64,000 nt of DNA, from NCBI RefSeq assembly GCF_001447785.1, contig NW_015161407.1:1246040-1310039 (forward strand), given 5' to 3'. Shown one piece after another: positions 155-64,000 of this stretch (position 1 is its first letter; the number at the start of each line of letters is the position of its first letter). The DNA comes from Gekko japonicus. Taxonomy: Eukaryota. Under the pieces are notes generated by a model. It was not told where the DNA came from. It searched no databases and worked only from the letters and a program-made list of their open reading frames with translations. The translations under genes were made by a program, and so were the position numbers.

Positions 155-203
155 NNNNNNNNNNNNNNNNNNNNNNNNNNNNNNNNNNNNNNNNNNNNNN
201 NNN
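155..203. other. Assembly gap (49 N)
   Basis: N run. Confidence 1.
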
Positions 204-4400: not shown

Positions 4401-7400
4401 ATCTCAGAGTTCTTGTACAATAGAAAATTTGACTGCCATATGGAAATCCAGAGACGTCATGAGTGTATTTCAGATCAAGAAAAATTCAGAATAACGTTAG
4501 TTGTTTAATCATAATAGCCACACAAGAGTGTGTTCCAAAACATGAATGTTGCTTCATATTTATAAATGTTATACCTCATTCTCATGGTTAGGAAGAGAAT
4601 GTGTGGAGAGAGCTTTTACTTTCTGCAGTTGACATAACCCCATGTGTTTTCCTTTGCTTAATCACAACCCGAGGGTAGAGGACTGTTGATATGTAATGAT
4701 GTCCTTAGTTGTTGAAACAATGTGGGTGAATTATGGACAAGTAACATTTTGTACTCATTTCATGCATGACTAGCTTATTACCAAAGTTCTGTCACTTTGG
4801 AAATCAGTAAAGACGTTGAAGTAGCATGCCAAAGGACATGGAAAGGGTTGCATAGTGAAATGTGTATCTGTTCCCGTGATACTTGTGAAATCCAAAAAAA
4901 AATTAACTTCTGAAAATGTGCTCCACTGAGTTGTTTAGTTTTACTAACTTTGTTTGTCTGCCTCTAATATTTAACCAAATCGTGCTACTGAAAATTGCCA
5001 GCTAAACTGCTTTAAAGAGATACTTTTCATGTTAGGATGTCCTTTACAATNNNNNNNNNNNNNNNNNNNNNNNNNNNNNNNNNNNNNNNNNNNNNNNNNN
5101 NNNNNNNNNNNNNNNNNNNNNNNNNNNNNNNNNNNNNNNNNNNNNNNNNNNNNNNNNNNNNNNNNNNNNNNNNNNNNNNNNNNNNNNNNNNNNNNNNNNN
5201 NNNNNNNNNNNNNNNNNNNNNNNNNNNNNNNNNNNNNNNNNNNNNNNNNNNNNNNNNNNNNNNNNNNNNNNNNNNNNNNNNNNNNNNNNNNNNNNNNNNN
5301 NNNNNNNNNNNNNNNNNNNNNNNNNNNNNNNNNNNNNNNNNNNNNNNNNNNNNNNNNNNNNNNNNNNNNNNNNNNNNNNNNNNNNNNNNNNNNNNNNNNN
5401 NNNNNNNNNNNNNNNNNNNNNNNNNNNNNNNNNNNNNNNNNNNNNNNNNNNNNNNNNNNNNNNNNNNNNNNNNNNNNNNNNNNNNNNNNNNNNNNNNNNN
5501 NNNNNNNNNNNNNNNNNNNNNNNNNNNNNNNNNNNNNNNNNNNNNNNNNNNNNNNNNNNNNNNNNNNNNNNNNNNNNNNNNNNNNNNNNNNNNNNNNNNN
5601 NNNNNNNNNNNNNNNNNNNNNNNNNNNNNNNNNNNNNNNNNNNNNNNNNNNNNNNNNNNNNNNNNNNNNNNNNNNNNNNNNNNNNNNNNNNNNNNNNNNN
5701 NNNNNNNNNNNNNNNNNNNNNNNNNNNNNNNNNNNNNNNNNNNNNNNNNNNNNNNNNNNNNNNNNNNNNNNNNNNNNNNNNNNNNNNNNNNNNNNNNNNN
5801 NNNNNNNNNNNNNNNNNNNNNNNNNNNNNNNNNNNNNNNNNNNNNNNNNNNNNNNNNNNNNNNNNNNNNNNNNNNNNNNNNNNNNNNNNNNNNNNNNNNN
5901 NNNNNNNNNNNNNNNNNNNNNNNNNNNNNNNNNNNNNNNNNNNNNNNNNNNNNNNNNNNNNNNNNNNNNNNNNNNNNNNNNNNNNNNNNNNNNNNNNNNN
6001 NNNNNNNNNNNNNNGTGGCTTCTACATGTCCATTCAGACTTAGACAGATATGCTGCAGAGGTAGAAAAGTATTTGTTGAATATATGTATGTTTGTACAGT
6101 TTCTGCTAAGCACTGTCTGAACTGCAAGAAGAACTCTTTAATTGATCTCAGAGTTCTTGTACAATAGAAAATTTGACTGCCATATGGAAATCCAGAGACG
6201 TCATGAGTGTATTTCAGATCAAGAAAAATTCAGAATAACGTTAGTTGTTTAATCATAATAGCCACACAAGAGTGTGTTCCAAAACATGAATGTTGCTTCA
6301 TATTTATAAATGTTATACCTCATTCTCATGGTTAGGAAGAGAATGTGTGGAGAGAGCTTTTACTTTCTGCAGTTGACATAACCCCATGTGTTTTCCTTTG
6401 CTTAATCACAACCCGAGGGTAGAGGACTGTTGATATGTAATGATGTCCTTAGTTGTTGAAACAATGTGGGTGAATTATGGACAAGTAACATTTTGTACTC
6501 ATTTCATGCATGACTAGCTTATTACCAAAGTTCTGTCACTTTGGAAATCAGTAAAGACGTTGAAGTAGCATGCCAAAGGACATGGAAAGGGTTGCATAGT
6601 GAAATGTGTATCTGTTCCCGTGATACTTGTGAAATCCAAAAAAAAATTAACTTCTGAAAATGTGCTCCACTGAGTTGTTTAGTTTTACTAACTTTGTTTG
6701 TCTGCCTCTAATATTTAACCAAATCGTGCTACTGAAAATTGCCAGCTAAACTGCTTTAAAGAGATACTTTTCATGTTAAGATGTCCTTTACAATGCTTGG
6801 TTTTGCACTCTCTCTTAATGCTCTGTGTTGTGCTTTCAATTTCTTACCTTTCCTGACGGTCTGATTCTTGTGTTTGTGCTTTCCACTTCACAGGCATGCA
6901 GTATGGTGGATATGTTAATAATCAAGCTAGCTCTCCAGCAACTCCCTTGTCATCAAGTACAGATGATGAGGAAGAGGATGAGGAGGATGAGGAAGCAGGT
7001 CTGCTTTAGCTTTGCACTAGTATTTCTCACATTTCATGCCCATTTTTGATTATCCTAATAACTGAAGAAGTCAAAAATTCTGTTTTATATAGGAGTTAAA
7101 GATAGAGATCAGTAATTAAAAAAACCCTCTTCAGTAAGCATTTCACTTAGAATCAAAAGCATGGAAGCGCATACTGAATTATCAGTTGGGCTTTTTAAAA
7201 ATAATTATCATGGGTTCTGGTAAAGTTCTGTGGTGCCTTTGCATCATTTCTTATGTTAGAAATAACGTGCTCTTTGTTGACCTCATCATAAACACAGATT
7301 GCTTTCTTTGCAGTTAAATATGTTATCATATTTTGGTATTTAGCGGGTATGAGAAAGTTATCCATAAATAACTGCAGTCCTAAACAGACTTAAACTCTTC

Positions 7401-42745: not shown

Positions 42746-43199
42746 GCAGAAAAGTACAGAAAAGGCAGAGGCATCTCTTAACAACTTGCGCACTTCCAGC
42801 TGTAAAATGTGAATGCATATGTAAAAATAATGGCTGGTGAATCTCCAAAGATGGTTATTAAATATGGAGTAGTTTGTATCACCGGTTCCCCATCAGAGGT
42901 AGAAAAACAATGCCTGCTTTAAAAACGCAGTAGAATTTTAACATGTTCAGAATTACAGTCTACTTGTGCTTGAAAACCCTGAGCACAACTGCTGGACTGA
43001 GTAGACGGCCAGTATGAGTAGAACTGACTTTGATGGACAAATGGATTCAATTTATGCTGTGTCTTTCTGTGCTGAGGAGAATGCTCACCGAGGAAACAAC
43101 CTCCGGACCTGCTGCTGAGTAACCAGCCTAAAGGCTGCGATGAAAATCACTCAAAGCATCTTTCTACCCCCAGTGATAGGTGATAGAAGTCCCTCTCCC

Positions 43200-44270
43200 C
43201 TTGTTCTCTCATACTACTACGCTGCAGGGTGACCTAAAGGGTGGGAATCCTTCACATAGTCGACCGTGACGGGAAGAGAGGGCTTCTTCCAGCCCTGACT
43301 GCAGGTCGTCGTCTCGACCCCTTCCCACCTCAGACCAGCGACTCCGTTCTTTTCACAGTCCCTCTGGATCGCCTTTGCAACGTAAAGCCGCCACGTTCCC
43401 GCCAATCAGAAACCAAGCTGAACGTGAAGGTCGCAGCTTGAGCCTCACACTTGGGCAAGATTGACCCCCCCCCCTCCTCCAAAAAAACCAATATGTGCGC
43501 TACACACTTATTAAACGACGGGCGGCATGCGGAAGTTAGCAGCCCCGCTTCAGACCAGCCTCCCGCTCTGTTGGGCCGGCTTGGTGGGGCGATCAACTAG
43601 GGGAAGGGAACAGAGAAGCCCCGCCTCCCCTCCCTTTAATCCCGCCCTCTCCGGCTCTTGGCGGCGTTCGGAGGGAGCTGCCGCTGGATTCCCGCGGTGG
43701 TGCAGCTCCTGCCTCGCCCTCTCCGCGCGCGCTCCGCCTCGCCCGGGCAGGGTTACGCGCCTCGACGCCTCTGCTCAGCCCGGCGGGACGTGCAGGATGC
43801 TCCCCTCCGCGGCGCAGTTACTCCGGAGTGCCTGGGGAGGGAGGTGGCAGCCCCGGATGCGGCTGCTCGCCCCTCTGGCGGGCGGAGGAGGGGGAGGGCG
43901 AAGAAACGGGAGCTCTTCCCTCCAGCGGGACCAGCCGCAGGTGAGTGGCGGCCCGGGCAGGGAGCGGGTCCGCGTTGGGCGCTCTTTCGCTCTCCTCCCT
44001 TTCAGGCCTCGAGAAGAAGAAGAAGAAGCGAAACTTCCTGGTGGTTGTTTCTCGCCAGGGCAAAGCGCCAGGTTGGGGCTTCGGTTGCTTTGGGCTTCCG
44101 GGCGGGTTGGAACCAAACAGAAAAGTTGCGTTGGGCTCCGGACGCGGCTGAAACCGCACGCTCTTTCCTGCCCCAGTGCCAGAGCTCGGGGCCTTCAGAC
44201 TAGAGAGCAAACTTGCAAAGAACGGAAGGAGAGGCAGAGCAGGCGTTCGAGTCCCGAATGGGGCTCTTTC
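43200..44270 (+). promoter_or_regulatory. CpG island promoter, copy 1
   Basis: High GC and CpG in an otherwise CpG-depleted region; CCAAT (GCCAATCAG) at ~43402; GC boxes at ~43618 and ~43641. Confidence 0.85.
43797..43940 (+). CDS. MCUB: First coding exon, probably MCUB (CCDC109B), copy 1
   Basis: ATG in CpG island; 48 aa Arg/Leu/Ala-rich, nearly acid-free MTS-like peptide (MLPSAAQLLRSAWGGRW...QPQ); strong CAG|GTGAGT donor. Gene name rests on conserved SEC24B-MCUB synteny, not on sequence recognition. Confidence 0.6.
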
Positions 44271-46107
44271 CAGATGTCATTCCTTCACTGATGAATTCCG
44301 GATGGGTGGGTAGTTGTGTCAGTCTGTGGCAGCCAAACAAAACAGGAGTCTTCTTGGTAGCCCTAACGGTGCCATTGGGCTTCTCTGTTATTATTCTCCG
44401 CCGCTGATCAAGACAGTGTGCATGAATGCTAAGGAAAGTGCGCTCTTTCCTCCCGTATTCCAAAGAGCCTGTGGAAACAATCTTCACTTTAAACCGCAGA
44501 CTTGCAATTTTCTTATAAAGACTTTCCAATACCATATCAACCTACAGTTCTTTAAGGATGCGTTTGTATCTCGATTTCAGCACTATACTTAGCACTGGGA
44601 ATGCTGCTAGCCCTTGGGGACTTCATGCATGTCTAGATTGAAATGAGAACAGACTGTGCCTTTTCCCTTGGTACTTGAAATTGCTAGTGGCATTGAACAT
44701 TGCCAGTGGCATTGAGAGTCATACCCTTCTCATAAACACACGTGTCCATGGAGATGTCTACTATTTCTGCCTTGGTGGTGACCGTTAGAGAGAGGATACA
44801 CTTCGTTAAGGAAGGGGTAATATATCTGTGTGCTGTTGCAAGACGACCCAACATTAATCAGCCTTGCCTTGCCAAAACGCCTGAGCATTAGAAAGCCACT
44901 GGAGGTAATCTCGTGGGAGGGAAGCAATTAGTTCAGTTAGATCGAGCAGTTAGTTGCTGGCAGCATTTTTCTTTCTGCCTTCTTTCTCTCATTTGTATTT
45001 GCCATCCCCTTATTTTCAGTGGGTTGTAAAATAAGAGTTTTCTGAAGCTCAGAACTCTGCTGACACTTATCAGCCATTTGCCTTCCACAACTTCGTAGAG
45101 ACTCTTTCTAGCAAGGAAACAGCGCTCTGTGCCGAAACTCTTTATACGGGAGTAAAGGTTTTCTTCCTTTGTGAGCCCTCAAGGTGTGCCTGAGAAAATG
45201 TATTTGGCAGCAAGTGATAGTGTTGTTTCCAGAGCGCTGTGATGAGAGCCACTCTTTATTGCTTAGAGGCAAAGTCTTCTCTCTGACAGGATATAGGCTC
45301 AGAATTAAGCATATGCCGCTTTGATCTTATGAAAAATAAACAAAAAAGCCCTGTTGAAAATCATGACATTTCCCCCTCCCCCCACCACACTCTTTTTGGT
45401 TCTACATCAACTGTTGTCCTACTTTTGGAAGAATAACAAATTATCCATGGAAAACACTTAAGGAGCTGTTTATTTAGCACAGATGTATTCTGTGCACTCT
45501 GTACTCAAAACACAGACAATCTGCATATAAATGACTCTTGTAAATAATTGTAGTAAATCAACTAGAGTTCAATAAATGTATGATTTCCAATGCCTGCTTC
45601 TAGCTGTTGAAGCCATCCTCCCTTGGGGCTTGTTTATTTATTTTTGCATGCTGGATATGCACTGCTGGGTAGTATCTACAGAGGCCCCATATAACAACAG
45701 GAGCTCATCAGCAGGCATTTAGATTGTTACTTAGTCACCCTGGGTTAAGTAGCTTAACCTTCTGTCACCACTTCAATGCAATATTGCTGAATGATTCCGG
45801 AAGGTATGCTGTTGTTTTCTTTATGTTCCCTTGTACATTTAACATGTTCATTTTGTAAAATTTTGGCTTCATTGCTGTGGAAAGTGGTAGCCTGTGAAAT
45901 GGTGAAGCATCACTTTGGATATTGTTTTTTAAAAAATATATATTTTCCCCATGTGTGGGCTCATGTGTGCTGAGGAGAATGCTCACCGAGGAAACAACCT
46001 CCGGACCTGCTGCTGAGTAACAAGCCTAAAGGCTGCGATGAAAATCACTCAAAGCATCTTTCTACCCCCAGTAAGGTAGCTAAACAGGTGACAGAAGTCC
46101 CTCTCCC

Positions 46108-47178
46108 CTTGTTCTCTCATACTACTACGCTGCAGGGTGACCTAAAGGGTGGGAATCCTTCACATAGTCGACCGTGACGGGAAGAGAGGGCTTCTTCCAG
46201 CCCTGACTGCAGGTCGTCGTCTCGACCCCTTCCCACCTCAGACCAGCGACTCCGTTCTTTTCACAGTCCCTCTGGATCGCCTTTGCAACGTAAAGCCGCC
46301 ACGTTCCCGCCAATCAGAAACCAAGCTGAACGTGAAGGTCGCAGCTTGAGCCTCACACTTGGGCAAGATTGACCCCCCCCCCTCCTCCAAAAAAACCAAT
46401 ATGTGCGCTACACACTTATTAAACGACGGGCGGCATGCGGAAGTTAGCAGCCCCGCTTCAGACCAGCCTCCCGCTCTGTTGGGCCGGCTTGGTGGGGCGA
46501 TCAACTAGGGGAAGGGAACAGAGAAGCCCCGCCTCCCCTCCCTTTAATCCCGCCCTCTCCGGCTCTTGGCGGCGTTCGGAGGGAGCTGCCGCTGGATTCC
46601 CGCGGTGGTGCAGCTCCTGCCTCGCCCTCTCCGCGCGCGCTCCGCCTCGCCCGGGCAGGGTTACGCGCCTCGACGCCTCTGCTCAGCCCGGCGGGACGTG
46701 CAGGATGCTCCCCTCCGCGGCGCAGTTACTCCGGAGTGCCTGGGGAGGGAGGTGGCAGCCCCGGATGCGGCTGCTCGCCCCTCTGGCGGGCGGAGGAGGG
46801 GGAGGGCGAAGAAACGGGAGCTCTTCCCTCCAGCGGGACCAGCCGCAGGTGAGTGGCGGCCCGGGCAGGGAGCGGGTCCGCGTTGGGCGCTCTTTCGCTC
46901 TCCTCCCTTTCAGGCCTCGAGAAGAAGAAGAAGAAGCGAAACTTCCTGGTGGTTGTTTCTCGCCAGGGCAAAGCGCCAGGTTGGGGCTTCGGTTGCTTTG
47001 GGCTTCCGGGCGGGTTGGAACCAAACAGAAAAGTTGCGTTGGGCTCCGGACGCGGCTGAAACCGCACGCTCTTTCCTGCCCCAGTGCCAGAGCTCGGGGC
47101 CTTCAGACTAGAGAGCAAACTTGCAAAGAACGGAAGGAGAGGCAGAGCAGGCGTTCGAGTCCCGAATGGGGCTCTTTC
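46108..47178 (+). promoter_or_regulatory. CpG island promoter, copy 2
   Basis: Duplicate of copy 1 at offset +2908. Confidence 0.8.
46705..46848 (+). CDS. MCUB: First coding exon, probably MCUB, copy 2
   Basis: Identical to 43797-43940. Confidence 0.6.
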
Positions 47179-50094
47179 CAGATGTCATTCCTTCACTGAT
47201 GAATTCCGGATGGGTGGGTAGTTGTGTCAGTCTGTGGCAGCCAAACAAAACAGGAGTCTTCTTGGTAGCCCTAACGGTGCCATTGGGCTTCTCTGTTATT
47301 ATTCTCCGCCGCTGATCAAGACAGTGTGCATGAATGCTAAGGAAAGTGCGCTCTTTCCTCCCGTATTCCAAAGAGCCTGTGGAAACAATCTTCACTTTAA
47401 ACCGCAGACTTGCAATTTTCTTATAAAGACTTTCCAATACCATATCAACCTACAGTTCTTTAAGGATGCGTTTGTATCTCGATTTCAGCACTATACTTAG
47501 CACTGGGAATGCTGCTAGCCCTTGGGGACTTCATGCATGTCTAGATTGAAATGAGAACAGACTGTGCCTTTTCCCTTGGTACTTGAAATTGCTAGTGGCA
47601 TTGAACATTGCCAGTGGCATTGAGAGTCATACCCTTCTCATAAACACACGTGTCCATGGAGATGTCTACTATTTCTGCCTTGGTGGTGACCGTTAGAGAG
47701 AGGATACACTTCGTTAAGGAAGGGGTAATATATCTGTGTGCTGTTGCAAGACGACCCAACATTAATCAGCCTTGCCTTGCCAAAACGCCTGAGCATTAGA
47801 AAGCCACTGGAGGTAATCTCGTGGGAGGGAAGCAATTAGTTCAGTTAGATCGAGCAGTTAGTTGCTGGCAGCATTTTTCTTTCTGCCTTCTTTCTCTCAT
47901 TTGTATTTGCCATCCCCTTATTTTCAGTGGGTTGTAAAATAAGAGTTTTCTGAAGCTCAGAACTCTGCTGACACTTATCAGCCATTTGCCTTCCACAACT
48001 TCGTAGAGACTCTTTCTAGCAAGGAAACAGCGCTCTGTGCCGAAACTCTTTATACGGGAGTAAAGGTTTTCTTCCTTTGTGAGCCCTCAAGGTGTGCCTG
48101 AGAAAATGTATTTGGCAGCAAGTGATAGTGTTGTTTCCAGAGCGCTGTGATGAGAGCCACTCTTTATTGCTTAGAGGCAAAGTCTTCTCTCTGACAGGAT
48201 ATAGGCTCAGAATTAAGCATATGCCGCTTTGATCTTATGAAAAATAAACAAAAAAGCCCTGTTGAAAATCATGACATTTCCCCCTCCCCCCACCACACTC
48301 TTTTTGGTTCTACATCAACTGTTGTCCTACTTTTGGAAGAATAACAAATTATCCATGGAAAACACTTAAGGAGCTGTTTATTTAGCACAGATGTATTCTG
48401 TGCACTCTGTACTCAAAACACAGACAATCTGCATATAAATGACTCTTGTAAATAATTGTAGTAAATCAACTAGAGTTCAATAAATGTATGATTTCCAATG
48501 CCTGCTTCTAGCTGTTGAAGCCATCCTCCCTTGGGGCTTGTTTATTTATTTTTGCATGCTGGATATGCACTGCTGGGTAGTATCTACAGAGGCCCCATAT
48601 AACAACAGGAGCTCATCAGCAGGCATTTAGATTGTTACTTAGTCACCCTGGGTTAAGTAGCTTAACCTTCTGTCACCACTTCAATGCAATATTGCTGAAT
48701 GATTCCGGAAGGTATGCTGTTGTTTTCTTTATGTTCCCTTGTACATTTAACATGTTCATTTTGTAAAATTTTGGCTTCATTGCTGTGGAAAGTGGTAGCC
48801 TGTGAAATGGTGAAGCATCACTTTGGATATTGGTTTTTTAAAAAATATATTTTCCCCATGTGTGGGCTCATGTGTACTTAAAGATTCTCATCAAGCAGTT
48901 GTGTTGCATCGAAGACCCCTAGGGATGGCTTTCCTTCTTTGAATTACTCCATTGCTTTGCAAGTCAGCAAATGGTATTTCTGAAGGGGAAAGGTTATGTG
49001 CTTGGTTATAATCTATGCTGTTAACACTGGCTTAACGGTGTGCTATGCATATACAAATGTGCTTATGTAAAACAAAATTATATGCTTGGTGTTATGGCCA
49101 AGATAAAAAAAACCCTCATGGTAGTAAAATGCTAAACCACTAGCAAAACATCACTGACAGTTAAAGTTAGTACTAGTAACGTGCCTTTACTCAAATGTAC
49201 CATTCCATTTTCACATGTACTTTTGCAGCAGATTCAAATCATTATTTTTGCTACAACAGTTAAACATTATATAATTGATTTGCAGGGGTCTTGCAAACGC
49301 AGAATCTGTGTTGGGGGTTCAGAGCCCTTCCTTCCCTCCTCGTTTTTCACCCTCACTATATATAAAGGGGGATGTTTTTGGTATGTCAGTCTGACAAACA
49401 CAGACATAATCTGAGTAGTACTGAAATGTAGGTCCTTCTGTGGGAAAGGGTCAGCTATTGTGGCTGGCCTCGGGTAGTCAGCCAATACCTGTGGTTGCAC
49501 CAGAGAGTGGTCTTGCCTTTGACATCATGGTGAGCCTAAGATGTGCATGAAGTACCACAGAAGCACGGCATAGCTTCAAGGACAACCCTCTCCTCCCGAG
49601 CTCACAAAAAAGTTCGGATGGGTTCTACTCACCTGAAAGAGGCAGGACATTTGTCATGGGACCAAGATACATAAAATTATTGGATCAGTTTCGTCTTAAA
49701 GAGGACTCCTTGCCTTTAGATAAATTTGTGTTATAAGGAAGAGATTCTTTAGTGTAGCTCATGGAAATAAATAGCATAATAGTGTTTATCAATGTGACTG
49801 CTTATAATTTTAAGAGTGCTTGAATCCCCCCCCCCCTCTGCCCGGGTAATCTATTGAAGAACATAGAAACACCATTTCCTCTGGTAATCTTGGGAACATG
49901 GAAGCAAGATCCACAGCATACTAGCAGTAATTATGGGACAAGAAAGTTCATTAGCGAAAGAACTCGCTACATCTCTGGAGCAGAGGGAAAGTTAGTTGAG
50001 TGATTAGTTATTCTTCTTGCAAGTTGGGCTTCAGCTGGCTGTGGCATACGGTGAGTGGGATCCCGCTGAGAAACTTCAGTGAGGAGTCTGCGCG

Positions 50095-52883: not shown

Positions 52884-55269
52884 CTTGCACTTAGTGCCCA
52901 AAGTGAATGACTTCAAGGTTATGTAACAACTCATTGTGGATGCTTAGTCAATGATATGCAAACAACCACTCTTTTAAAGTGTTCCAAGTCTCCAGGTTAT
53001 CGTTAGCAAGGAAGGCTGAGAGCATTGTTCTGCACATGCAATGGATCTGACAGCTATATTGTAATCACAAGGTAATGAGCTTCCCACATGCTTAATTCAG
53101 CTGAAGGCTCTGCTGGCAAACTGTTAGGATAATATCCAAGAACACTGTTTACTATGGTGGGTGCAGATGTAATGCTGGCTTCCTTTGCATTGCAGTGAAC
53201 AAATTAAAAACCGGCCTCTTCATGGAGAAAATTCTCCTTTCCTCTTTAACTGCAGCTTGTTGGTACTGCTGCAAGAGTCACATTGAAGCAGCAATTTCAT
53301 GTTCTTTTAAGGGAGGCATTGGTTAGACTTATATTTGACCATAGTTAATGCTGGTGCTGAGGAAGTTGGTCTGGGGCATTTGCTCCAGGGCTGGCTTCTA
53401 AAGGTAACTCCTAACTTGCTAGATGTGGTAGGCTGATAGCCCAGTGACTGGCAAGTCGTGAGAATACAGTTCAAAATAAATTACAGCCAGTAACCTGTAG
53501 GCATACATGACTTAACTCTCTTTTGCTTTCCTCCAGAAGTTTGCCAGGTATGGATGGTCCCCTTAAAGCTTTTGGTTTCGTAAATATCTTAAACCAATTT
53601 AACATGGGAGGGGGGGTGGACACTGACTTTGTTGTTAGGGTATAAAACTTGAACAGTTTGTAGAAGACTTCTTTGCCAGAGAAGCCTGATTAACAAAATC
53701 ATGTCGGCAAAATCCATTTGGAGAAAGAGACTTTGGATGTGAATAATTCTTGTGCGTGTGTTAAAATCTTAGTGTTTACTGTTGATGGTCTATTAAAGCA
53801 TCCATCCAGCAGTCTTTAAAAAAACAAAAACACCAGTATTAAAACTGAATTCCACAGTTCCACACGTGAAGAAAGCCAAAATGAAACAAATGATCTATTT
53901 GGTAGATTTTTTTTATCCTGCTTTTGTTCCTCAGACCAGCTCAGCACGGTGTATATTGTTTTCCTGCTCATCCCCGAAACAACTCTTTGAGATGCGTTGG
54001 GCACAGAGTGAGTGACTGTCCCAAGATCACCCAGTAGGTTTTGTGGCACAGTGAAGATTTGAATGCCGGTCTCCCAGATCCTAGTCTAATAGTCTACCAG
54101 TTGAAGTGGAAATGTTCATTTTCGCCATGAATAGAATAAAAATGAACAAGGATTTTTCGAAAATATAGCAGATAAATATTTCTGTTTTCCTAACGTATTA
54201 AATGGTCCCACCCGCCTTCTTAAAACACTTGGTGGGTGCCAGGAAAGGTTTTAGTGGACACCATGGGGCCTTCAGGTACCACATTGGGGACTCCTGGTTT
54301 GGATGTTCCTGCAGCAAATTTTCTGGTTTTGTTTTGCAGTAAAGGAGGACTCAAAACTTTATGAATTCTAGACAGACTTATTCTGTTGTTAGTAACTCAC
54401 CTTAATTCCTCTTGACATTCTCTAAGCTTAGAGGCACTGGATTACATAAATTAGAAAACACAACTGCATCTTTGCTCTTGGGTGAGATCTCCGATGAGTG
54501 TAAACATCAGGAAAAGGGTCATTCTCTTCCTGGTTTTGTTTTCCACCTTTCCTTTCAGAGCATGATAGTAAAGATAATACATTCTGTCAACGCTACATCC
54601 CCAGGACATCACAGGCCAGCTGCAAAGAACAAATTAATCATTCTTGCGTCCTCTGCCTTGGGGTAGAGTTTTCCAAATATATCACTCATCTATAGGGCTG
54701 CCATCTTATTTATGTGCCTCACAAGTTTAATTTCCCCTGCTGGTTCAGTAGTAGAGACTACTGGACTGCATCTATGATGCAGAGAGTAGATGCTGCATCC
54801 TGGTTATTCTAAGATTCATTTGTATTCATTTGTATGTTCCTTACCCAACAGCAAACTAGGGCAGAAGATTTCCTAGCTTTGTTCCATTGATTTGAATGGT
54901 AGATTCATGACTGGATCTTTAACTGTGTAGGGTCACACATGGAGAGGAGACAGGGTTTTGATCATTGAAACTAGCCCCCCTCCTGCATTATTGACAGCTC
55001 ATTTTTTTCTTTTAAGGGGTTTTAATTAATAGCACTGGGCAGTTTTAATTAGCAAGGGAAGGGCACAAACCACATGGCAAGCCAAAACTGGAGCCAAATT
55101 CTGGCAGGATTGGGGCTCAGGGGGTAGGGCAACATTTGGTGCACGGATGGTCTCTGAAGAAATCTCTGAGCTTTTGGGAGCATCTCAGGGTGGCTTGGAG
55201 AATGAAACCCTGTAAAGAAGTTGTAACTCCAGGGACTTCACAACTTCGGTCCTGGTCCCAAAAATGAGT

Positions 55270-56376
55270 AGCCTTTGCCAGCTTTTGAACCTATTAGATT
55301 TCATCTTTTCAGCAACCTCAGCAGCTTCTCGCAAGCTTGCTACCTTTTTATCTTGAATCAAGGCTGAAAGTCCTTCTGGAAGGAAGGAGAAAAACTGTTC
55401 CAACAAAATTAACTCTCTGAGTTCAACAAAAGTAGTCACATTTTTTGCAGCCAGCCAATAAACCAAATTTTGAGCCAACTTGGCTGCAACCACTGGCAGG
55501 CTATTCTCTGCCCAGCAATGTCTTGTCAATTTTTTGAAAAGCTTTTCTATAAGCCTCAGGACCCAAGGCAAACCTTTGCTTTGCCAAGTCCTTAAATCCC
55601 CAGTAGTCTCCTGCTTGATAAAGAGGCATCTGGCCCAAAAGATCTGCCAAAGGGCCACTAACTTGAGATCTCAAAATGGACATATAAAAGCGCTGTGGCA
55701 CTCTATAATCCATTCCTGACATGAAAGTTCAAGCAGGTTAAAAAATGCCAAAATGTCATTTCCAGTCTTATACACAGGAAACATACGTCTGTCAAAATGC
55801 AAGGCTGTAAGTCCCTCTTCTCTCTGTCTGCCACCACACTGTGGTAAACATGAGCCACCAGTATCCCTCAGTCTCTGATCAGCTGGGCCTCTTCCTTCCC
55901 CAGGAAAGAGCAGGACCATTTGGCTGACATCCATCCCCAGGGTGCCAAGACTTATGATCTGACACGCATCTTCAAAGTTAGCAAATGATGAACGACCCCT
56001 CAGTTCTTGCCGCTGGCTCAACTACAGACACACTCCTCTGGCCCTGAAGCCTGGCGTAACCTTCAGCAAGGTCCTGTAGCTGAAGTCCTCTTTGACTGCT
56101 GTTAAACCTTTGATCCAAAAGGCCAGCATCAGATTCCGCACCCCCTCTATGAGGCCAATAATTCCTTAAGGTCTGTTCAGATGTATATACTGATTTTCTA
56201 TTTGAAAACCCAACAGTCTCTTTAAAACCATGTCTTGACTTCCTTCTAGGCAAGGGTCTAGGTTCCCAATAAAAATCAGCTAGATAATCCGGCCTACCAC
56301 TAACATCCATAGTCTGGAAAGACATATCTTCCCAAAGTGATAACTCTTGATCCTGACATTCAGCCATACTGGCCAA
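55270..56376 (-). pseudogene. Frameshifted gag with SCAN-like capsid C-terminal domain
   Basis: Segments FPVYKTGNDILAFFNLLE, DYWGFKDLAKQRFALGPEAYRKAFQ and LAQNLVYWL...LRELILLEQFFSFLPEGL lie in successive frames. Confidence 0.75.
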
Positions 56377-57381: not shown

Positions 57382-58260
57382 TTCTACAGGAGATAGAAAA
57401 GAGGAAATCATAAAAGGCTTGAACACTGCTGCCACAACCTAAAACCCACACACATAACATTTAATCCTTTACAAACCCACCCAGAAGCTCTGGTGGGAAA
57501 ATGCTAGACAATGGTAGAGGTGGTGTTTTCCAGCCTTAGAAGCACAAATAGGGATCCTCCAAAGCTTGACAGGCACTCCTACCTGCCAATAACATAGTCT
57601 CCATTCATTGCAATGGGTCTCAGAACTATATAAGTATAGGGTGAATGCACATTCTTTTTGTTGGCATTGTAGTTTTGGATGTAGAGGGGGTACATGTGAT
57701 CATGAAAGAGCTTTGCTGCTGGGCGTGGTGGGGGATTGCTTAGCTAGCTTAGTCAGTCAGGGACCAGGGGGCTTAGTTTTTCCCTGGGTTCCTCTGTGTT
57801 GCAATTCAGTTTTTGTTTGTTTGTTTACTGCAAACGGTGGAAAAAATTGGGACTGAATTCCTCTTTCACATTATAGCATTTTTGCTTAGTGGGATTTTCC
57901 GGCATACTCTCTGCTTCCATGGTATTGGTTTCCCTTTGTTTTTCTTTTCATTTTATTTTACCCCCCTCCCTTTTGGGTTGCAGTAATATGAGGGATTGAT
58001 CTTTGGGGTTTGGGGGGCTCCTGTTTTGGGGGGGCTTCTCTGCCATTTTATCACACACTGGGCTGCTTTTTGTTTTGGGGTGATCTGTATTTATATTTAC
58101 TGCCCACTGACTTTACTGCTCTCCATTTGAAACCCCCCTACTGACCTGCTTCTCCTTGGGGGGTGATCTCTCTCAGCCTGCCTCCCTGCATCCAGCCTGC
58201 TTTGGGGGGCTTGTTCCAGAGTTACTGGGGTGACTTCCCTTTACTCCCAGCTTTCCATTT

Positions 58261-58671
58261 TGTTGGAAGTTACAAGTTAGAACACTTCTATTCAGTATTT
58301 ACTGAGTTAATGCTGTGTTCTGAATCACATGTTTGTTTGTATCCTATCTGCTTAGAGAGTTAGAAAGCCCGCCAGATACAGATCTAGTTTGTTGTTTTGA
58401 TTGGGGAATGGAGTGTTACTATTTAGCATTTTATGGCTCTTTGTCCCTGAGCAAGAAGAAGCTCCAGCCTCCATTACTCTTCGTTAAGTTTTCTAGATGA
58501 GAGGATGTAGAAATAAAGCTCTTTGTTATTTTACCTCCTGTTTACCCTACCCTTGATAGGTTGTTAGTAAACTTTTTATATTTTGAAACTACCATGGACT
58601 CAGACTCATTTTTACTCTGCTAACTCTGCTGAATTAAGAAATTAAGAAATTAAATACTAAACCATCTAACA
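58261..58671 (+). repeat. Copia 5' LTR
   Basis: TGTTGG...CTAACA; contains AATAAA. Confidence 0.97.
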
Positions 58672-58687
58672 GGTTATGGTTGCCCAG
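58672..58687 (+). other. Primer binding site, internal (half) tRNA-iMet type, with 2-nt insertion
   Basis: GGTTATGGttGCCCAG versus GGTTATGGGCCCAG, the complement of the tRNA-iMet anticodon arm. Confidence 0.8.
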
Positions 58688-59003
58688 ACAGAGTTGTTTT
58701 TTTGAGCCATGTGTATTAGAACTTAAGAAAGAACAGAAAAGAATTTTTTTGAAATTTTTTCTGGAACAAGAGAGAGTCTTCTTTGTTTTTTCTCGAGTCT
58801 GCTAAGCCTTGTGCTAGCAGAACAGAAGGCAAGAGGAATTTCATCTCCTGCTGTGAACTATCTCCAACACAAAAGGATTTTCCCAGAGAGCTGAACGACA
58901 GCGCCTGAGGGAACGAAGGAGATCACAAGCAACCCCAGACGATCCCAGACGAACGACAGACGACCTCGCTTCTACAAAGGGAAGTTTTGGTAAAGTAGTA
59001 AAA

Positions 59004-62000
59004 ATGGCGTCTGCACACGGTTATAACATACCGAAATTATCGGCTAGTAATTACCATTACTGGAAAGAATGCTTAAAGTGCATATTAGAGGCCAGTTCTT
59101 CCAATCATGTTTTGGAGAACAAAGGAAATGTAAAGAAGGCCGTTAAATGCTTTGTCTGTTCCCGAACGGGCCATCTTTCCAAAGACTGCTGGTTTAGACA
59201 ATCACAGACAGATCAAAGAAATAAAGACATGCGCTCTCCCCCTATTTCTTCTGTAAGAGGAAACGCCAGAGGGCGTGGCAATGGGAAGCCAAACGGTCAT
59301 CAGGGGCAGGAAAAATCCAAGCCTGTGTTTCTCCTGAGAGAGGCTGTGCCAGAAACTGCAGGAAAGCGAGCCGAATGTGCGAATGTGCTTGCTGTAAACA
59401 TTAATCATAGCAGAGAATACAGTGATGAATCACTGTGGCTACTGGACACAGGGAGTGCCGTCCACATTTGCAACAGTGCTGAATATTTTGTTGATCTGAA
59501 TAAAGATGAGATGCCCAAACTGATCAAAGTTGATAATGAACCATTGAGAGTTGCTGGAACAGGAAAGATTTTTCTTAATGTGTTAAATTCTGCTGGCCAA
59601 ATTCAGCAAATGACTTTAAATGATTGTGTATTTGTGCCTGAAGCTAGTACTTGTCTGATCTCCTCAAGGAGAATTATTGCTGCTGGTTTTAACATTAATC
59701 TTAAAAAGGGACAAGGAAAAATTTGGCACAAAGATGGAGTCGAGCTCATTATGGAAGAGCACGACAGTTACCATTATGTAAGAAATCTTGGCATAACTGA
59801 AAATGATGAACTGGACACAAGTGGACCTGTGTTTCACACAAAATCATCTGAATGTGAGCACAAAGACTGTTTATTTAAATGGCATGTGATGTTTGCTCAC
59901 AGAAATTTACAAAGTGTGAGAAAGCTTCTGAAGGGCTGTAATATTGATGCTGTTGAATGCAATACTATTAGTAATGGTTGTGATACCTGTTTTAAGGCAA
60001 AAGGCAAAGCGCCTTGTTACAGAGGCAAAAATCCAGAACAAGATAAAGGTTTTCTAGAGACTGTGTACTCAGATCTTGTTGGCCCTATCAAACAATCTAC
60101 TGGTGGTAGTAAATACTTTGTGACTTTTATGGAAGCAAAATCCAGATATGTCTATACCTACCTACTTAAAAGTAAAGACCAAGTACTTGACAAATTTAAG
60201 TGCTATGTTGCTGCTGTTAAAAATAAATTTGGCAAAGCGCCTGAAGTGTTATTCACTGACAATGGCACAGAGTATTGCAGCAGTGAGTTCCAAAGGTTCA
60301 TGGAACAAGAAGGAATTGAACATCAAACAACTATTGTTTATTCTCCAGAACAAAATGGAACAGCGGAACGCTTAAACAGAACCATACTAGAAATGGCGCG
60401 TTCTATGCTAATACAATCTGGAATTTCAGAAGATATGTGGGGTGAAGCAGTCAATACAGCTACTTACCTGCACAATAGAGTTCCATCTAAAACTACAAAT
60501 AAAATTCCTTTTCAATTATGGCATAACAGGATGCCTGGACTTAAACACATTAAAGCATTTGGATCTAAAGCCTATGCCCACATTCCAAAAGAGAAAAGGG
60601 GCAAATTAGAGCCAAGAGCAGAAATTGGTATCCTAGTGGGGTACGCTCAAGGAGGAAAAGGCTACCGAATTTTTGATTCTACAAACTGTGTAATTAGAGA
60701 ATGCAATGTGGTACATGTTGATGAGAGTAACATCCTGCAAACTCCTAAGCCAGCTGAGTCCACAGCACAACCTGTCAATCAGGAATCTACAGATGTCTCT
60801 TTCTTTGATGTGATCACTTGGCAATCTGCAGAGACCACCTGTGACCAGGCAGGTCCATCTCCACAAGAGGATTCCACCTCAGAAGGGGAACAAGGGAATT
60901 CCACCTCAGAAGGGGAACCAGGAGAGGCAACGCCAAGGGTAAGAGAGACAACTGCTGTGAGACAATCAGCAAGGAGTACCAAAGGTGTTCCACCACCAAT
61001 GTACGGAATTTGTGCAAGTGTGCAACAAATAAAGGAACCTACTAACTGGAAGGAAGTTAATCAACTACCTGCATCTGAAAGAAGCAAGTGGATTAATGCC
61101 ATGGAAGAAGAATTTGCATCTTTGCAAGACAAACAAGTTTGGACTCTTACTGAGTTACCTTCAGAAAGAAAAGCCATCGGCTGTAAGTGGGTGTACAAAG
61201 TGAAGTATAACCCTGACGGCGAAGTGGACAAGTACAAAGCTCGTCTTGTCGCAAAAGGATTTTCTCAAAAATATGGAATCGATTTCTCGGAAACTTTTGC
61301 ACCTGTTGTAAGCTACACAACCTTCAGAACACTTTTGAGCATAGCAGCCTCAAGGGGCATGCACATTGAACATTTGGACGTCAAAACTGCGTTTCTCAAT
61401 GGAGAATTGAATGAAGAAATCTACATGGAACAACCAGAAGGATTTTCAACAAAAGGACAAGAAGGCCTAGTGTGCAAACTCAACAAAAGCGTTTATGGAC
61501 TAAAGCAAGCAGCAAAAGCGTGGAATGAGAAACTGACTGAACTGTTACAAAAACAGAACTTTCAACAAGGAATAGCAGAACCGTGTTTGTTCTCAAGAAT
61601 CAAAAATGGACAATATCAGTACATACTCATTTATGTTGATGACTTGATTATTTGTTGTGAAAATCAAGGAGATGTACAGGAAATAGCAGATGAACTAAAC
61701 AAGGAAGTGGAAGTGAAACAATTGGGACCTATAAAACACTATCTTGGAATACAAATTGAAAGAACTGATGATGGAAGTTTTCTTCTAAGCCAAAAGCAAA
61801 AGATCATGGACTTTATTGAATCTGTAGGAATGAAACATTCCAAGCCAGTGAGCACACCTCTTGAAAAGGATTACCTCAAGAATACAGAGGGACCACTACT
61901 TCCAAATAACCACGAATACAGATCAGCAATAGGAAAATTATTGTATCTTAGCAAAATTTGTCGACCAGACATAACTTCAGCTGTTGGACTATTATGCAGA

Positions 62001-62591
62001 AAGACCAGCTCACCGACTATCCATGACTGGAAAGCTGTAAAAAGACTGGCAAGATACCTAAAAGGAACTTTGGATTACAAACTGAAAATCTCATCCTGTG
62101 ATGAACCAAGACTGACTGGTTTCATGGATGCCAACTGGGGAAAAGACACAACTGATGGAAAATCTACAAGTGGATACTTATTCTACTATGGAAACAGTTT
62201 AATTGACTGGACTAGTCAAAAGCAATCTGTTGTAGCGATCTCTACTGCAGAAGCTGAATGTGTATCAGCGCAAAGTGCCAGCTATGAACTGTACTGGATC
62301 ATTCATCTACTGAAAGACTTTGGAATAGACGAACCGAAACCAATAATAATGTATGAGGACAATCAAGCTTGCATCGTTCTCTGCAAAGGTGAGAGCACCA
62401 AATCCAAGAGTAAGACCATTGCTCTTCAATGCAAATATGTGAAAGACTTACAAGACAAAGGACTCATTGAACTTCGTTACTGTCCTACTGACCAGATGAC
62501 TGCCGACATCCTGACCAAGCCGCTTGACAAGCAACGTTTTGAGAATCTTCGTGAAAGTTTAAATTTGCATGATTTCAGTGTTATAACTTGA
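59004..62591 (+). CDS. Copia Gag-Pol polyprotein, 1195 aa, uninterrupted
   Basis: Zn knuckle CFVCSRTGHLSKDC, protease WLLDTGS, integrase H-H-C-C plus SDLVGP/TDNGTEY/NGTAER and GKGY, RT YKARLVAKG/YVDD, RNase H DANW/AEAE/EDNQ/ADILTK. Confidence 0.97.
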   Translation: MASAHGYNIPKLSASNYHYWKECLKCILEASSSNHVLENKGNVKKAVKCFVCSRTGHLSKDCWFRQSQTDQRNKDMRSPPISSVRGNARGRGNGKPNGHQGQEKSKPVFLLREAVPETAGKRAECANVLAVNINHSREYSDESLWLLDTGSAVHICNSAEYFVDLNKDEMPKLIKVDNEPLRVAGTGKIFLNVLNSAGQIQQMTLNDCVFVPEASTCLISSRRIIAAGFNINLKKGQGKIWHKDGVELIMEEHDSYHYVRNLGITENDELDTSGPVFHTKSSECEHKDCLFKWHVMFAHRNLQSVRKLLKGCNIDAVECNTISNGCDTCFKAKGKAPCYRGKNPEQDKGFLETVYSDLVGPIKQSTGGSKYFVTFMEAKSRYVYTYLLKSKDQVLDKFKCYVAAVKNKFGKAPEVLFTDNGTEYCSSEFQRFMEQEGIEHQTTIVYSPEQNGTAERLNRTILEMARSMLIQSGISEDMWGEAVNTATYLHNRVPSKTTNKIPFQLWHNRMPGLKHIKAFGSKAYAHIPKEKRGKLEPRAEIGILVGYAQGGKGYRIFDSTNCVIRECNVVHVDESNILQTPKPAESTAQPVNQESTDVSFFDVITWQSAETTCDQAGPSPQEDSTSEGEQGNSTSEGEPGEATPRVRETTAVRQSARSTKGVPPPMYGICASVQQIKEPTNWKEVNQLPASERSKWINAMEEEFASLQDKQVWTLTELPSERKAIGCKWVYKVKYNPDGEVDKYKARLVAKGFSQKYGIDFSETFAPVVSYTTFRTLLSIAASRGMHIEHLDVKTAFLNGELNEEIYMEQPEGFSTKGQEGLVCKLNKSVYGLKQAAKAWNEKLTELLQKQNFQQGIAEPCLFSRIKNGQYQYILIYVDDLIICCENQGDVQEIADELNKEVEVKQLGPIKHYLGIQIERTDDGSFLLSQKQKIMDFIESVGMKHSKPVSTPLEKDYLKNTEGPLLPNNHEYRSAIGKLLYLSKICRPDITSAVGLLCRKTSSPTIHDWKAVKRLARYLKGTLDYKLKISSCDEPRLTGFMDANWGKDTTDGKSTSGYLFYYGNSLIDWTSQKQSVVAISTAEAECVSAQSASYELYWIIHLLKDFGIDEPKPIIMYEDNQACIVLCKGESTKSKSKTIALQCKYVKDLQDKGLIELRYCPTDQMTADILTKPLDKQRFENLRESLNLHDFSVIT

Positions 62592-62598
62592 GAAGGGG
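62590..62598 (+). other. Polypurine tract
   Basis: GAGAAGGGG directly before the 3' LTR. Confidence 0.9.
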
Positions 62599-63009
62599 TG
62601 TTGGAAGTTACAAGTTAGAACACTTCTATTCAGTATTTACTGAGTTAATGCTGTGTTCTGAATCACATGTTTGTTTGTATCCTATCTGCTTAGAGAGTTA
62701 GAAAGCCCGCCAGATACAGATCTAGTTTGTTGTTTTGATTGGGGAATGGAGTGTTACTATTTAGCATTTTATGGCTCTTTGTCCCTGAGCAAGAAGAAGC
62801 TCCAGCCTCCATTACTCTTCGTTAAGTTTTCTAGATGAGAGGATGTAGAAATAAAGCTCTTTGTTATTTTACCTCCTGTTTACCCTACCCTTGATAGGTT
62901 GTTAGTAAACTTTTTATATTTTGAAACTACCATGGACTCAGACTCATTTTTACTCTGCTAACTCTGCTGAATTAAGAAATTAAGAAATTAAATACTAAAC
63001 CATCTAACA
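62599..63009 (+). repeat. Copia 3' LTR
   Basis: Identical to the 5' LTR by eye. Confidence 0.97.
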
Positions 63010-64000
63010 CATTTAAAAACCTCTCCCCAACTGACCTGCTTCTCTGGGGGGGAGGGGCAATCGATCTGTGCCTGCTGCCCAGCATGCCTGTCTGGTGTGA
63101 CAGACACACCCCGTCCTCCAGAAAACCAACCTTCTAGAAATTAAAGGGAGTAAATTTGGGGAGAATGAATGGGGGGAAAGGACTTAAGATAGAAGAGAAA
63201 GCAAGAAGAACCTAAACCAAAAGCCCCTCTCCACACACGCACAAACACACCAGACCAAAAAAAATAAAATGGGGAAAAAGTAGAGGAAACAAGCAACAAA
63301 GCCTCACACCCCAAATCCCAAAAAAAGAGAAACAGAAGAAAAAGATGGCAAAGGATGGTGAAGGGGGGGGGGGAGAGAGAGAGAGAGAGAGAGAGAATTT
63401 AAAGAAAATAACAGAACCTCTACACACACACGCCCAAAACAAGAACCAAAAATGAATGAGTTAACCAAGTTTTAAGCCAACTCCAACCAAAGCTAAGAAC
63501 CAACAAAAGGAACCCTTGTCCTGGCCTCGCCATCTACCACCAGGCCCAAACAACAACAAACTCCACAAGAATTACTGCAAGCACAAACGATCAGAAAGAG
63601 TAAAACCTAAAAATAAAGCCAAAGGGAACAACAACAACAACAAAAAGGCCTGAGGCTCTTGCCCTCACCCCCCCACACACACACACATAACCATCAGGCC
63701 CCATAAAACAAGCAAAAAACTCCAAATGTAAGCCACAACATCATAAGAAATTAAAACAAAAGAATAAAACCAAAGGGCACAAACAAAAAAAAGGCCTGAA
63801 GCCCTTGGTCTGACCCCCCCCCCACACACACACACCTACCACCCACCAAGTGCAAAGAATAAGTTAAAGTAAAATAAGAAGACTTTAAAACAATGTTAAG
63901 TGAAACCAGTCCCTGTCTTCAGTCTTCTGCAGGCAGGCAGGCAGGCAGGCAGGATCTGATCTGAAGTCCACAGTTGCTCAAGCAGCAGGAGTCAAACTCA

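What the first reader, a model, noticed from the sequence alone, without database searches (positions are those of the whole stretch)
59004..59190. Capsid-less Copia: apparent in-frame loss of most of Gag with Pol fully intact
Seen: the ORF starts with the usual Copia Gag N-terminal motif (IPKLSASNYHYWKECLKCILE, aa 9-29) and reaches the CCHC zinc knuckle at aa 49. All downstream catalytic motifs are intact and in frame. Known: Copia Gag normally has roughly 150-200 aa of capsid-like domain (Retrotran_gag_2/UBN2) between these motifs, and polyproteins are usually longer than 1195 aa. Inference: this is a Gag-defective, Pol-competent element that would need capsid in trans. That is the reverse of the usual non-autonomous pattern and could be one half of a complementing pair. 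The identical LTRs mean either that the deleted form itself transposed or that the deletion is very recent.
Basis: partly seen in the sequence, partly recalled or inferred. Interest (0 to 1): 0.8.

Follow-up and report, generated by a model that had tools for sequence, protein, structure and literature searches.

The report
Young Copia retrotransposon missing its capsid
A very recently inserted Copia-type jumping gene, probably in a reptile genome, has lost the capsid part of its coat protein by a clean in-frame deletion; such a copy cannot move unaided, this kind of defective derivative is already known, and nothing here shows that the deleted form spreads.

Summary
Window 58261-63009 is a complete Ty1/Copia LTR retrotransposon of 4,749 bp. 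It has identical 411-bp LTRs, a 5-bp target duplication (CATTT), a primer-binding site, a polypurine tract and one 1,195-aa ORF.

The ORF keeps the Gag N-terminal motif (aa 9-30) and the CCHC knuckle (aa 49-62). These lie 28 residues apart, against 174-237 (median 204) in 55 full-length relatives. A profile built from 83 relatives shows that about 173 positions, the whole capsid core, are absent. No frame anywhere in the window encodes that core. An AlphaFold model shows one helix, the knuckle and a disordered linker ahead of a well-folded protease, integrase, reverse transcriptase and RNase H.

The copy cannot build a capsid, so it is non-autonomous. Intact Pol is what extreme youth predicts, and an in-frame deletion has a one-in-three chance.

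Mobility of the deleted form is therefore untested. Precedents exist (BARE-2, IAP 1Δ1). Interest is low to moderate.

The parts
58256..58260 (+). Target-site duplication, left copy (CATTT)
   Evidence: Read directly. It is identical to 63010-63014.
58261..58671 (+). 5' LTR, 411 bp, TG...CA ends, contains an AATAAA signal
   Evidence: 100% identical to 62599-63009 by alignment and blastn 411/411. The repeat finder shows the first 300 nt.
58672..58689 (+). Primer-binding site directly after the LTR. It is complementary to the anticodon arm of initiator tRNA-Met (half-tRNA type): 8 contiguous bases, a 2-nt bulge, then 6 more bases.
   Evidence: Sequence. It was compared by eye with the antisense tRNAiMet probe printed in PMC5648532. 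Half-tRNA priming in copia and Ty5 is described in PMC5371799.
59004..62591 (+). Single Gag(ΔCA)-Pol ORF, 1,195 aa, stop TGA at 62589-62591
59004..59093 (+). Retained Gag N-terminus (aa 1-30) with a DUF4219-like motif. The model shows a single helix at aa 17-31.
   Evidence: Pfam, HMM domain 1, alignment, AF2 model.
59088..59135 (+). Zone holding the deletion junction (aa 29-44). About 146-209 codons (about 173 profile positions) of capsid core are missing here.
   Evidence: The model has pLDDT below 50 for aa 32-46.
59148..59189 (+). CCHC zinc knuckle (nucleocapsid-like), aa 49-62
   Evidence: Pfam zf-CCHC. C49, C52, H57 and C62 are invariant in 61 sequences.
59190..59432 (+). Basic linker between knuckle and protease (aa 63-143). 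It is predicted disordered from aa 72 on, after a short helix at 63-74. It is longer than in relatives: 85 aa against a median of 45.5.
   Evidence: AF2 pLDDT below 50 for aa 72-140. Spacing statistics.
59433..59786 (+). Aspartic protease (aa 144-261), active site D148-T-G
   Evidence: Pol_BBD, invariant D148 and G150, confidently folded.
59853..60722 (+). Integrase (aa 284-573): HHCC zinc site, DDE core, SH3-like C-terminal domain
   Evidence: gag_pre-integrs, rve and SH3_retrovirus. Invariant H294, H299, C326, C329, D357, D419 and E455.
60863..60922 (+). 27-bp in-frame tandem duplication (2.2 copies) in the disordered integrase-RT linker
   Evidence: TRF and translation.
61134..61865 (+). 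Reverse transcriptase, RVT_2 (aa 711-954), YVDD at 877-880
   Evidence: Pfam E 5e-72 and invariant columns.
62091..62558 (+). RNase H (about aa 1030-1185), D1042/E1085/D1119/D1168
   Evidence: Invariant or nearly invariant columns, confidently folded, 66% identity to a python fragment.
62590..62598 (+). Polypurine tract (GAGAAGGGG) abutting the 3' LTR
   Evidence: Read directly.
62599..63009 (+). 3' LTR, 411 bp
63010..63014 (+). Target-site duplication, right copy (CATTT)
   Evidence: Read directly.

Best explanation
This is one very young insertion of a Ty1/Copia LTR retrotransposon in a CpG-depleted, vertebrate-like genome, probably a squamate reptile. Its polyprotein gene carries an in-frame internal deletion of about 175 codons. 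The deletion removes the capsid (Retrotran_gag_2/UBN2) core of Gag. It leaves the first 30-39 residues, the zinc knuckle, protease, integrase, reverse transcriptase and RNase H.

Shown: the anatomy, the missing core, the absence of any substitute capsid, and the intact Pol motifs.

Inferred:
(a) The copy is non-autonomous because it cannot assemble a virus-like particle.
(b) The deletion most likely predates integration. Either reverse transcriptase switched template during the cycle that made this copy, or a recently deleted RNA was packaged by a full-length sibling's Gag. I consider the two about equally likely.
(c) Pol is intact because the copy is too young to have decayed, not because the deleted form is selected.
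(d) Its capsid-less polyprotein is unlikely to enter a helper's particles. If the element moves at all, it moves as a passenger RNA using the helper's Gag and Gag-Pol. Its LTRs, PBS and PPT are intact, which that route requires.
For: Complete element with identical LTRs and a 5-bp TSD.

Capsid core absent by four measures: Pfam, a family profile, spacing statistics and alignment. No capsid in any frame of the window.

AF2 with a 61-sequence alignment shows only one helix (17-31), the knuckle with a short helix (63-74) and a disordered stretch (72-140) before well-folded Pol domains.

The architecture is derived, not a lineage trait. None of 120 relatives combines the N-terminal motif and the knuckle without the core; the 24 that lack the core are all N-terminally truncated ORFs.

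Pol deviations from near-invariant columns look lineage-specific. Those that lie within the python fragment (for example D1044 and H1138) are also non-consensus in that relative.

Trans-mobilisation of deleted Ty1/Copia or ERV elements is established: mini-Ty1 with a helper (PMC3592414), BARE-2 and IAP 1Δ1.
Against: Only this one copy could be examined, so the timing of the deletion relative to integration is inferred from priors, not observed. Post-insertion deletion and assembly error cannot be excluded without reads or sibling copies. No full-length helper of the same family was seen in the window or in the protein collections, so the existence of a helper is assumed. The claim that capsid-less Pol is not packaged rests on knowledge of Ty1 and retroviruses, not on a test of this family.
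Confidence: 0.6

Rival explanations
1. Post-insertion deletion. A full-length, autonomous copy inserted here and later lost about 0.5 kb of gag at this locus by replication slippage or end-joining. The result is in frame by chance.
For: In-frame outcome has a 1/3 chance. Identical 411-bp LTRs still allow up to a few million years of residence at an assumed 1e-9 per site per year. Nothing in the sequence contradicts this reading.
Against: The element shows no other damage over 4.7 kb. In so young a copy, a single 0.5-kb deletion without any small indel or LTR substitution is a rare event. This is inference from general deletion spectra and was not measured here.
Confidence: 0.2
2. An established capsid-less but Pol-competent Copia lineage amplifies with capsid supplied in trans and may supply Pol to a Gag-only partner, forming a two-component system.
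For: The deletion is clean, in frame and spares every Pol motif as well as the LTRs, PBS and PPT. Precedents exist for Gag-less (BARE-2) and Gag-only (TR-GAG) Copia derivatives and for a highly active, partly deleted IAP subfamily that makes a GAG-POL fusion protein.
Against: No second copy, no partner and no close relative was found in the window or in a 15-billion-protein collection. Intact Pol is explained by youth. Pol in single-ORF Copia elements is packaged through the capsid part of Gag-Pol, so a ΔCA polyprotein is a poor Pol donor (established knowledge, inference for this family).
Confidence: 0.1
3. Assembly artefact. The junction was created by mis-assembly or collapse of reads from a full-length element.
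For: The window contains assembly gaps (N runs at 155-203 and 5051-6014), so the assembly is not finished quality. Reads were not available.
Against: The junction preserves the reading frame and lies in unique, non-repetitive sequence. No internal repeat was found that could cause a collapse.
Confidence: 0.07
4. Native minimal Gag. This Copia lineage is autonomous with a very short Gag, and particle formation is served by another part of the protein.
For: The knuckle-protease linker is unusually long: 85 aa against a median of 45.5.
Against: That linker is predicted disordered (pLDDT about 26-38). None of 120 relatives has this architecture. All 55 alignable full-length relatives have 174-237 aa between the two motifs.
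Confidence: 0.03

Closest known systems
BARE-2 of barley (Gag-defective Copia mobilised by BARE-1 Gag; Tanskanen et al. 2007, as described in PMC4350172)
   Same: It is a Ty1/Copia element that cannot supply its own Gag. It keeps the pol region and cis signals and depends on capsid from an autonomous relative.
   Different: PMC4350172 describes BARE-2 as an active, mobile element with a known helper family, BARE-1. From my own recollection, not checked here, it is a multi-copy subfamily whose defect is loss of Gag translation. Here there is one copy, an internal in-frame loss of the capsid core with the N-terminus and knuckle kept, an animal host, and no helper identified.
Mouse IAP 1Δ1 subfamily (PMC7411935)
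   Same: An internal deletion creates a fused, shortened polyprotein. The element is non-autonomous and needs Gag and Pol in trans.
   Different: It is a retrovirus-like ERV, not Copia, and its deletion lies in the gag-pol region. It is proven highly mobile with many insertions, and its fusion protein facilitates retrotransposition in cis. None of this is shown here.
Mini-Ty1 / helper-donor systems in yeast (PMC3592414 and references there)
   Same: They show that Ty1/Copia RNAs lacking coding capacity can be mobilised in trans if the cis signals near the LTRs are kept.
   Different: These are engineered elements. The packaging signals of the present family are unknown and may or may not lie in the deleted segment.
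TR-GAG elements of plants (PMC4350172)
   Different: No Gag-only element was found in the window, and none related to this family was found in the collections.
Drosophila copia and yeast Ty5 (half-tRNA priming; PMC5371799, PMC3592414)
   Same: The PBS abuts the 5' LTR and is complementary to the anticodon arm of initiator tRNA-Met rather than to its 3' end.
   Different: Here the match is 8 + 6 bases with a 2-nt bulge. Protein identity to other animal Copia elements is only 35-50%. The nearest is a python RT/RNase H fragment at 66%.

Membership tests
Ty1/Copia (Pseudoviridae) LTR retrotransposon | Direct LTRs with TG...CA ends, flanked by a 5-bp target-site duplication | tested here: met
   411-bp identical LTRs and CATTT on both sides.
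Ty1/Copia (Pseudoviridae) LTR retrotransposon | Domain order PR - IN - RT - RNase H (integrase upstream of RT) with an RVT_2-type RT | tested here: met
   Pfam order Pol_BBD, rve, SH3_retrovirus, RVT_2. Full-length alignment to 60 Copia polyproteins.
Ty1/Copia (Pseudoviridae) LTR retrotransposon | PBS after the 5' LTR and PPT before the 3' LTR | tested here: met
   PPT read directly. The PBS matches the tRNAiMet anticodon arm as 8 + 6 nt with a bulge. Priming itself was not tested.
Autonomous Copia element | Complete Gag with a capsid domain (Retrotran_gag_2/UBN2) between the N-terminal motif and the CCHC knuckle | tested here: not met
   No Pfam hit. Profile nodes 87-259 absent. Spacing of 28 aa against 174-237 aa. 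No capsid fold in the model.
BARE-2-like mobile Gag-defective non-autonomous element | Own Gag not functional while the cis signals are kept | tested here: met
   Capsid core absent. LTRs, PBS and PPT intact.
BARE-2-like mobile Gag-defective non-autonomous element | Several copies share the same defect at different sites with different TSDs | not testable with these tools
   There is only one copy in the window. The family is absent from the protein collections.
BARE-2-like mobile Gag-defective non-autonomous element | An autonomous helper family with matching LTR, PBS and packaging signals in the same genome | not testable with these tools
   None in the 64-kb window.
IAP 1Δ1-like in-frame deletion derivative | An internal in-frame deletion gives a fused, shortened polyprotein | tested here: met
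   The ORF is continuous from the Gag N-terminus through Pol.
IAP 1Δ1-like in-frame deletion derivative | Demonstrated amplification of the deleted form | not testable with these tools
   Same limits as above.

The most novel reading that the evidence does not exclude
The capsid-less form is a propagating subfamily in a vertebrate genome. It keeps pol under selection and forms a two-component system with a full-length or Gag-only partner. That would make it a Copia counterpart of IAP 1Δ1 or BARE-2 in an animal, perhaps favoured because loss of the gag segment removes a target of host silencing.
Probability: 0.1. Interest if true: 0.55.

Novelty: new member of a known kind. Interest (0 to 1): 0.3.

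Why it matters
If the deleted form proved mobile, it would be an animal example of a Gag-less Copia parasite of its own family. That could help show how non-autonomous LTR elements arise and compete with their helpers. As it stands, it documents two things. First, an active or very recently active, deeply divergent Copia family exists in a probable squamate genome: the nearest full-length relatives are 35-40% identical, and a python RT/RNase H fragment is 66% identical. Second, this is an ordinary deletion derivative of that family. For annotation, the copy should be labelled non-autonomous despite its long intact ORF.

Tried and rejected
1. Capsid elsewhere. I looked for a capsid in another frame, in the leader or elsewhere in the window. 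Small ORFs and a six-frame profile scan of all 64 kb found none.

2. Sibling copies.
- blastn of the element against the window found only itself.
- Exact-protein look-up: not in the collection.
- Word-indexed search with the whole protein: best full-length hits about 35% identity, best partial hits up to 40%.
- Exhaustive phmmer of aa 1-200 against 1.84 billion representatives: best E 2e-12, mostly zinc-knuckle or protease matches, and no close relative of this family.
- Search with the RT/RNase H part: best hit a 66%-identical python fragment.
- Degenerate DNA pattern for the N-terminal motif: metagenome contigs gave one chance hit that is not Copia; viral contigs and prokaryotic genome contigs gave none.
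Neither the python locus nor any other could be fetched.

3. Host identification. The SCAN-like ORF gave no homologue. There are no tRNA or Rfam hits in the window. The host is inferred only from CpG depletion, the SCAN domain and the python relative.

4. Native short-Gag lineage: rejected.

5. Pol decay. The query matches 133 of 151 near-invariant columns, the lowest of 61 sequences. It is also the outgroup. The RNase H deviations that lie within the python fragment are shared with it, and the protease S149T change is DSG to DTG, both being standard motifs. This is not evidence of decay.

6. Not attempted. dN/dS, breakpoint microhomology and splice-site tests all need sibling copies.

7. Species. 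I do not take the window for human: it carries an intact Copia whose nearest relative is from a python. The N runs were left as they are.

Full report
**What is there**

Window 58261-63009 is a structurally complete LTR retrotransposon of 4,749 bp.
- Two 411-bp LTRs (58261-58671 and 62599-63009) are identical at every position and end TG...CA.
- They are flanked by a 5-bp target-site duplication, CATTT (58256-58260 and 63010-63014).
- A polypurine tract (62590-62598) abuts the 3' LTR and overlaps the stop codon.
- Directly after the 5' LTR lies a sequence (58672-58689) complementary to the anticodon arm of the initiator tRNA-Met. I compared it with the antisense tRNAiMet probe printed in PMC5648532. 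The match is 8 contiguous bases next to the LTR, a 2-nt bulge, then 6 more bases.
- This is the half-tRNA type of primer site known from Drosophila copia and yeast Ty5 (PMC5371799, PMC3592414).
- A single ORF (59004-62591, 1,195 aa) has the Copia domain order protease, integrase, RVT_2 reverse transcriptase, RNase H.

Pfam finds a partial DUF4219 (aa 12-30) and zf-CCHC (aa 48-62) but no Retrotran_gag_2/UBN2. Four further checks agree.
- Alignment with 14 and then 60 relatives places a long gap exactly where their capsid domain lies.
- A profile of the first 340 residues of 83 full-length relatives matches query aa 1-39 to nodes 47-86 and aa 38-238 to nodes 260-414. About 173 profile positions are therefore missing.
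- The spacing from the motif tryptophan to the first knuckle cysteine is 28 residues. It is 174-237 (median 204) in 55 relatives, whose total length is 1,260-1,390 aa.
- The capsid core is not hidden elsewhere. Small ORFs of the leader and a six-frame profile scan of the whole window are negative.

An AlphaFold model built with a 61-sequence alignment (mean pLDDT 78) gives, for the first 143 residues, only one helix (17-31), the knuckle with a short helix (63-74) and a disordered stretch (72-140, pLDDT about 26-38). Protease, integrase, RT and RNase H are confidently folded.

All catalytic residues sit in invariant columns. The junction itself can be placed only within aa 29-44 (59088-59135). 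Residues 29-39 align weakly either with the end of the N-terminal motif or with the spacer before the knuckle.

**A derived state, not a lineage trait**

Of 120 relatives, 96 carry the core. The 24 that do not are N-terminally truncated ORFs with no N-terminal motif. None has the motif and the knuckle without the core.

**Host and family**

- The window is strongly CpG-depleted (observed/expected 0.27).
- It holds a SCAN-domain-like ORF (55185-55658, minus strand).
- The closest named relative of the element is an RT/RNase H fragment from the olive python, at 66% identity. The next relatives, at about 50%, come from a whipworm (nematode) and a spider.
- Full-length relatives are only about 35% identical.
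- The host is therefore probably a squamate reptile, though I could not confirm it (one search found nothing). I do not take the window for human.
- The element's own CpG depletion (0.35) suggests long residence of the family in methylated genomes.

**How it most likely works**

Without a capsid domain the polyprotein cannot assemble a particle, so the copy is non-autonomous. This is inference from established retroelement biology. Its LTRs, PBS and PPT are intact, so its RNA could in principle be packaged and copied by a full-length sibling's proteins. That is how engineered mini-Ty1, barley BARE-2 and mouse IAP 1Δ1 move.

I doubt the idea that it contributes Pol to a partner. In single-ORF Copia/Ty1 elements, Pol is brought into the particle as Gag-Pol through capsid-capsid contacts, and the protease is activated by crowding there. 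A capsid-less polyprotein would probably stay outside. This is established knowledge applied by inference.

Intact Pol needs no selection to explain it. Zero differences in 411 bp give a 95% upper bound of about 0.7% LTR divergence. That corresponds to at most about 13 substitutions in the ORF, and to an age of up to roughly 3-4 My at an assumed rate of 1e-9 per site per year. The in-frame outcome has a one-in-three chance.

**Origin of the deletion**

- inheritance from an already deleted RNA, meaning the deleted form is mobile in trans;
- template switching by reverse transcriptase in the very cycle that made this copy;
- deletion after insertion.

Pol deviations from near-invariant columns look lineage-specific rather than decay. 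This fits a recent deletion under any route. With one copy, the routes cannot be separated. My estimate is about 0.6 for a pre-integration origin, split roughly evenly between the first two routes, about 0.2 for post-insertion, and below 0.1 each for an artefact or the strong two-component reading.

**What could not be done**

No sibling copy, full-length or deleted, could be retrieved.
- The exact protein is not in the collection.
- An exhaustive search of 1.84 billion representatives with aa 1-200 found no close relative of the family: best E 2e-12, with matches mostly to zinc knuckles or the protease.
- DNA pattern scans gave one chance hit or none.
- The shared-breakpoint test, dN/dS and read support therefore remain open.

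A bench mobilisation test is listed under referred steps.

**Verdict**

This is a real, cleanly confirmed feature: a young Copia copy with an in-frame loss of the capsid core. It belongs to a known kind, the internally deleted non-autonomous LTR retrotransposon, with direct precedents. Nothing so far shows that it is more than a single defective copy.

Noticed in passing
window 58672-58689: The primer-binding site is of the half-tRNA type, complementary to the anticodon arm of initiator tRNA-Met as in Drosophila copia and Ty5. Here a 2-nt bulge interrupts the match (8 + 6 bases). Whether this is normal for the family or a second defect is unknown.
   Followed up: partly
window 60863-60922: A 27-bp in-frame tandem duplication (2.2 copies, 90% match) encodes a repeated Ser/Thr/Glu/Gly-rich nonapeptide in the disordered integrase-RT linker.
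   Followed up: no
window 59190-59432: The linker between the zinc knuckle and the protease is 85 aa, against a median of 45.5 in relatives. It is basic, rich in Arg, Gly, Asn and Lys, and predicted disordered from aa 72 on.
   Followed up: partly
window 55185-55658 (minus strand): An ORF with a SCAN domain (Pfam E 1.6e-10) lies about 2.6 kb upstream of the element. A homologue search found nothing, and neighbouring minus-strand ORFs have no Pfam hit. It may be a decayed SCAN gene or a Gypsy-gag relic.
   Followed up: partly
window 43068-48878: A 2.9-kb tandem duplication (43068-45971 and 45966-48878, 99.4% identical) sits in the most GC- and CpG-rich part of the window (CpG o/e 0.6). Each copy carries an identical 254-aa ORF with no Pfam hit.
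   Followed up: partly
window 58261-63009 compared with the whole window: The young element is itself CpG-depleted (o/e 0.35; LTR 0.16), close to the host background (0.27). This suggests the family has long lived in a methylating genome rather than arriving recently by horizontal transfer.
   Followed up: no
window 59004-62591: The family is very isolated. The nearest full-length polyproteins among 5.8 billion clusters are about 35% identical. The nearest fragment, 66% identical, comes from the olive python (Liasis olivaceus). Other near relatives, at about 50%, are from a whipworm and a spider.
   Followed up: partly
window 155-203 and 5051-6014: Runs of N (assembly gaps or masking). The four long 'ORFs' listed across 4971-6167 are artefacts of the N run. 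The gaps were left untouched.
   Followed up: no
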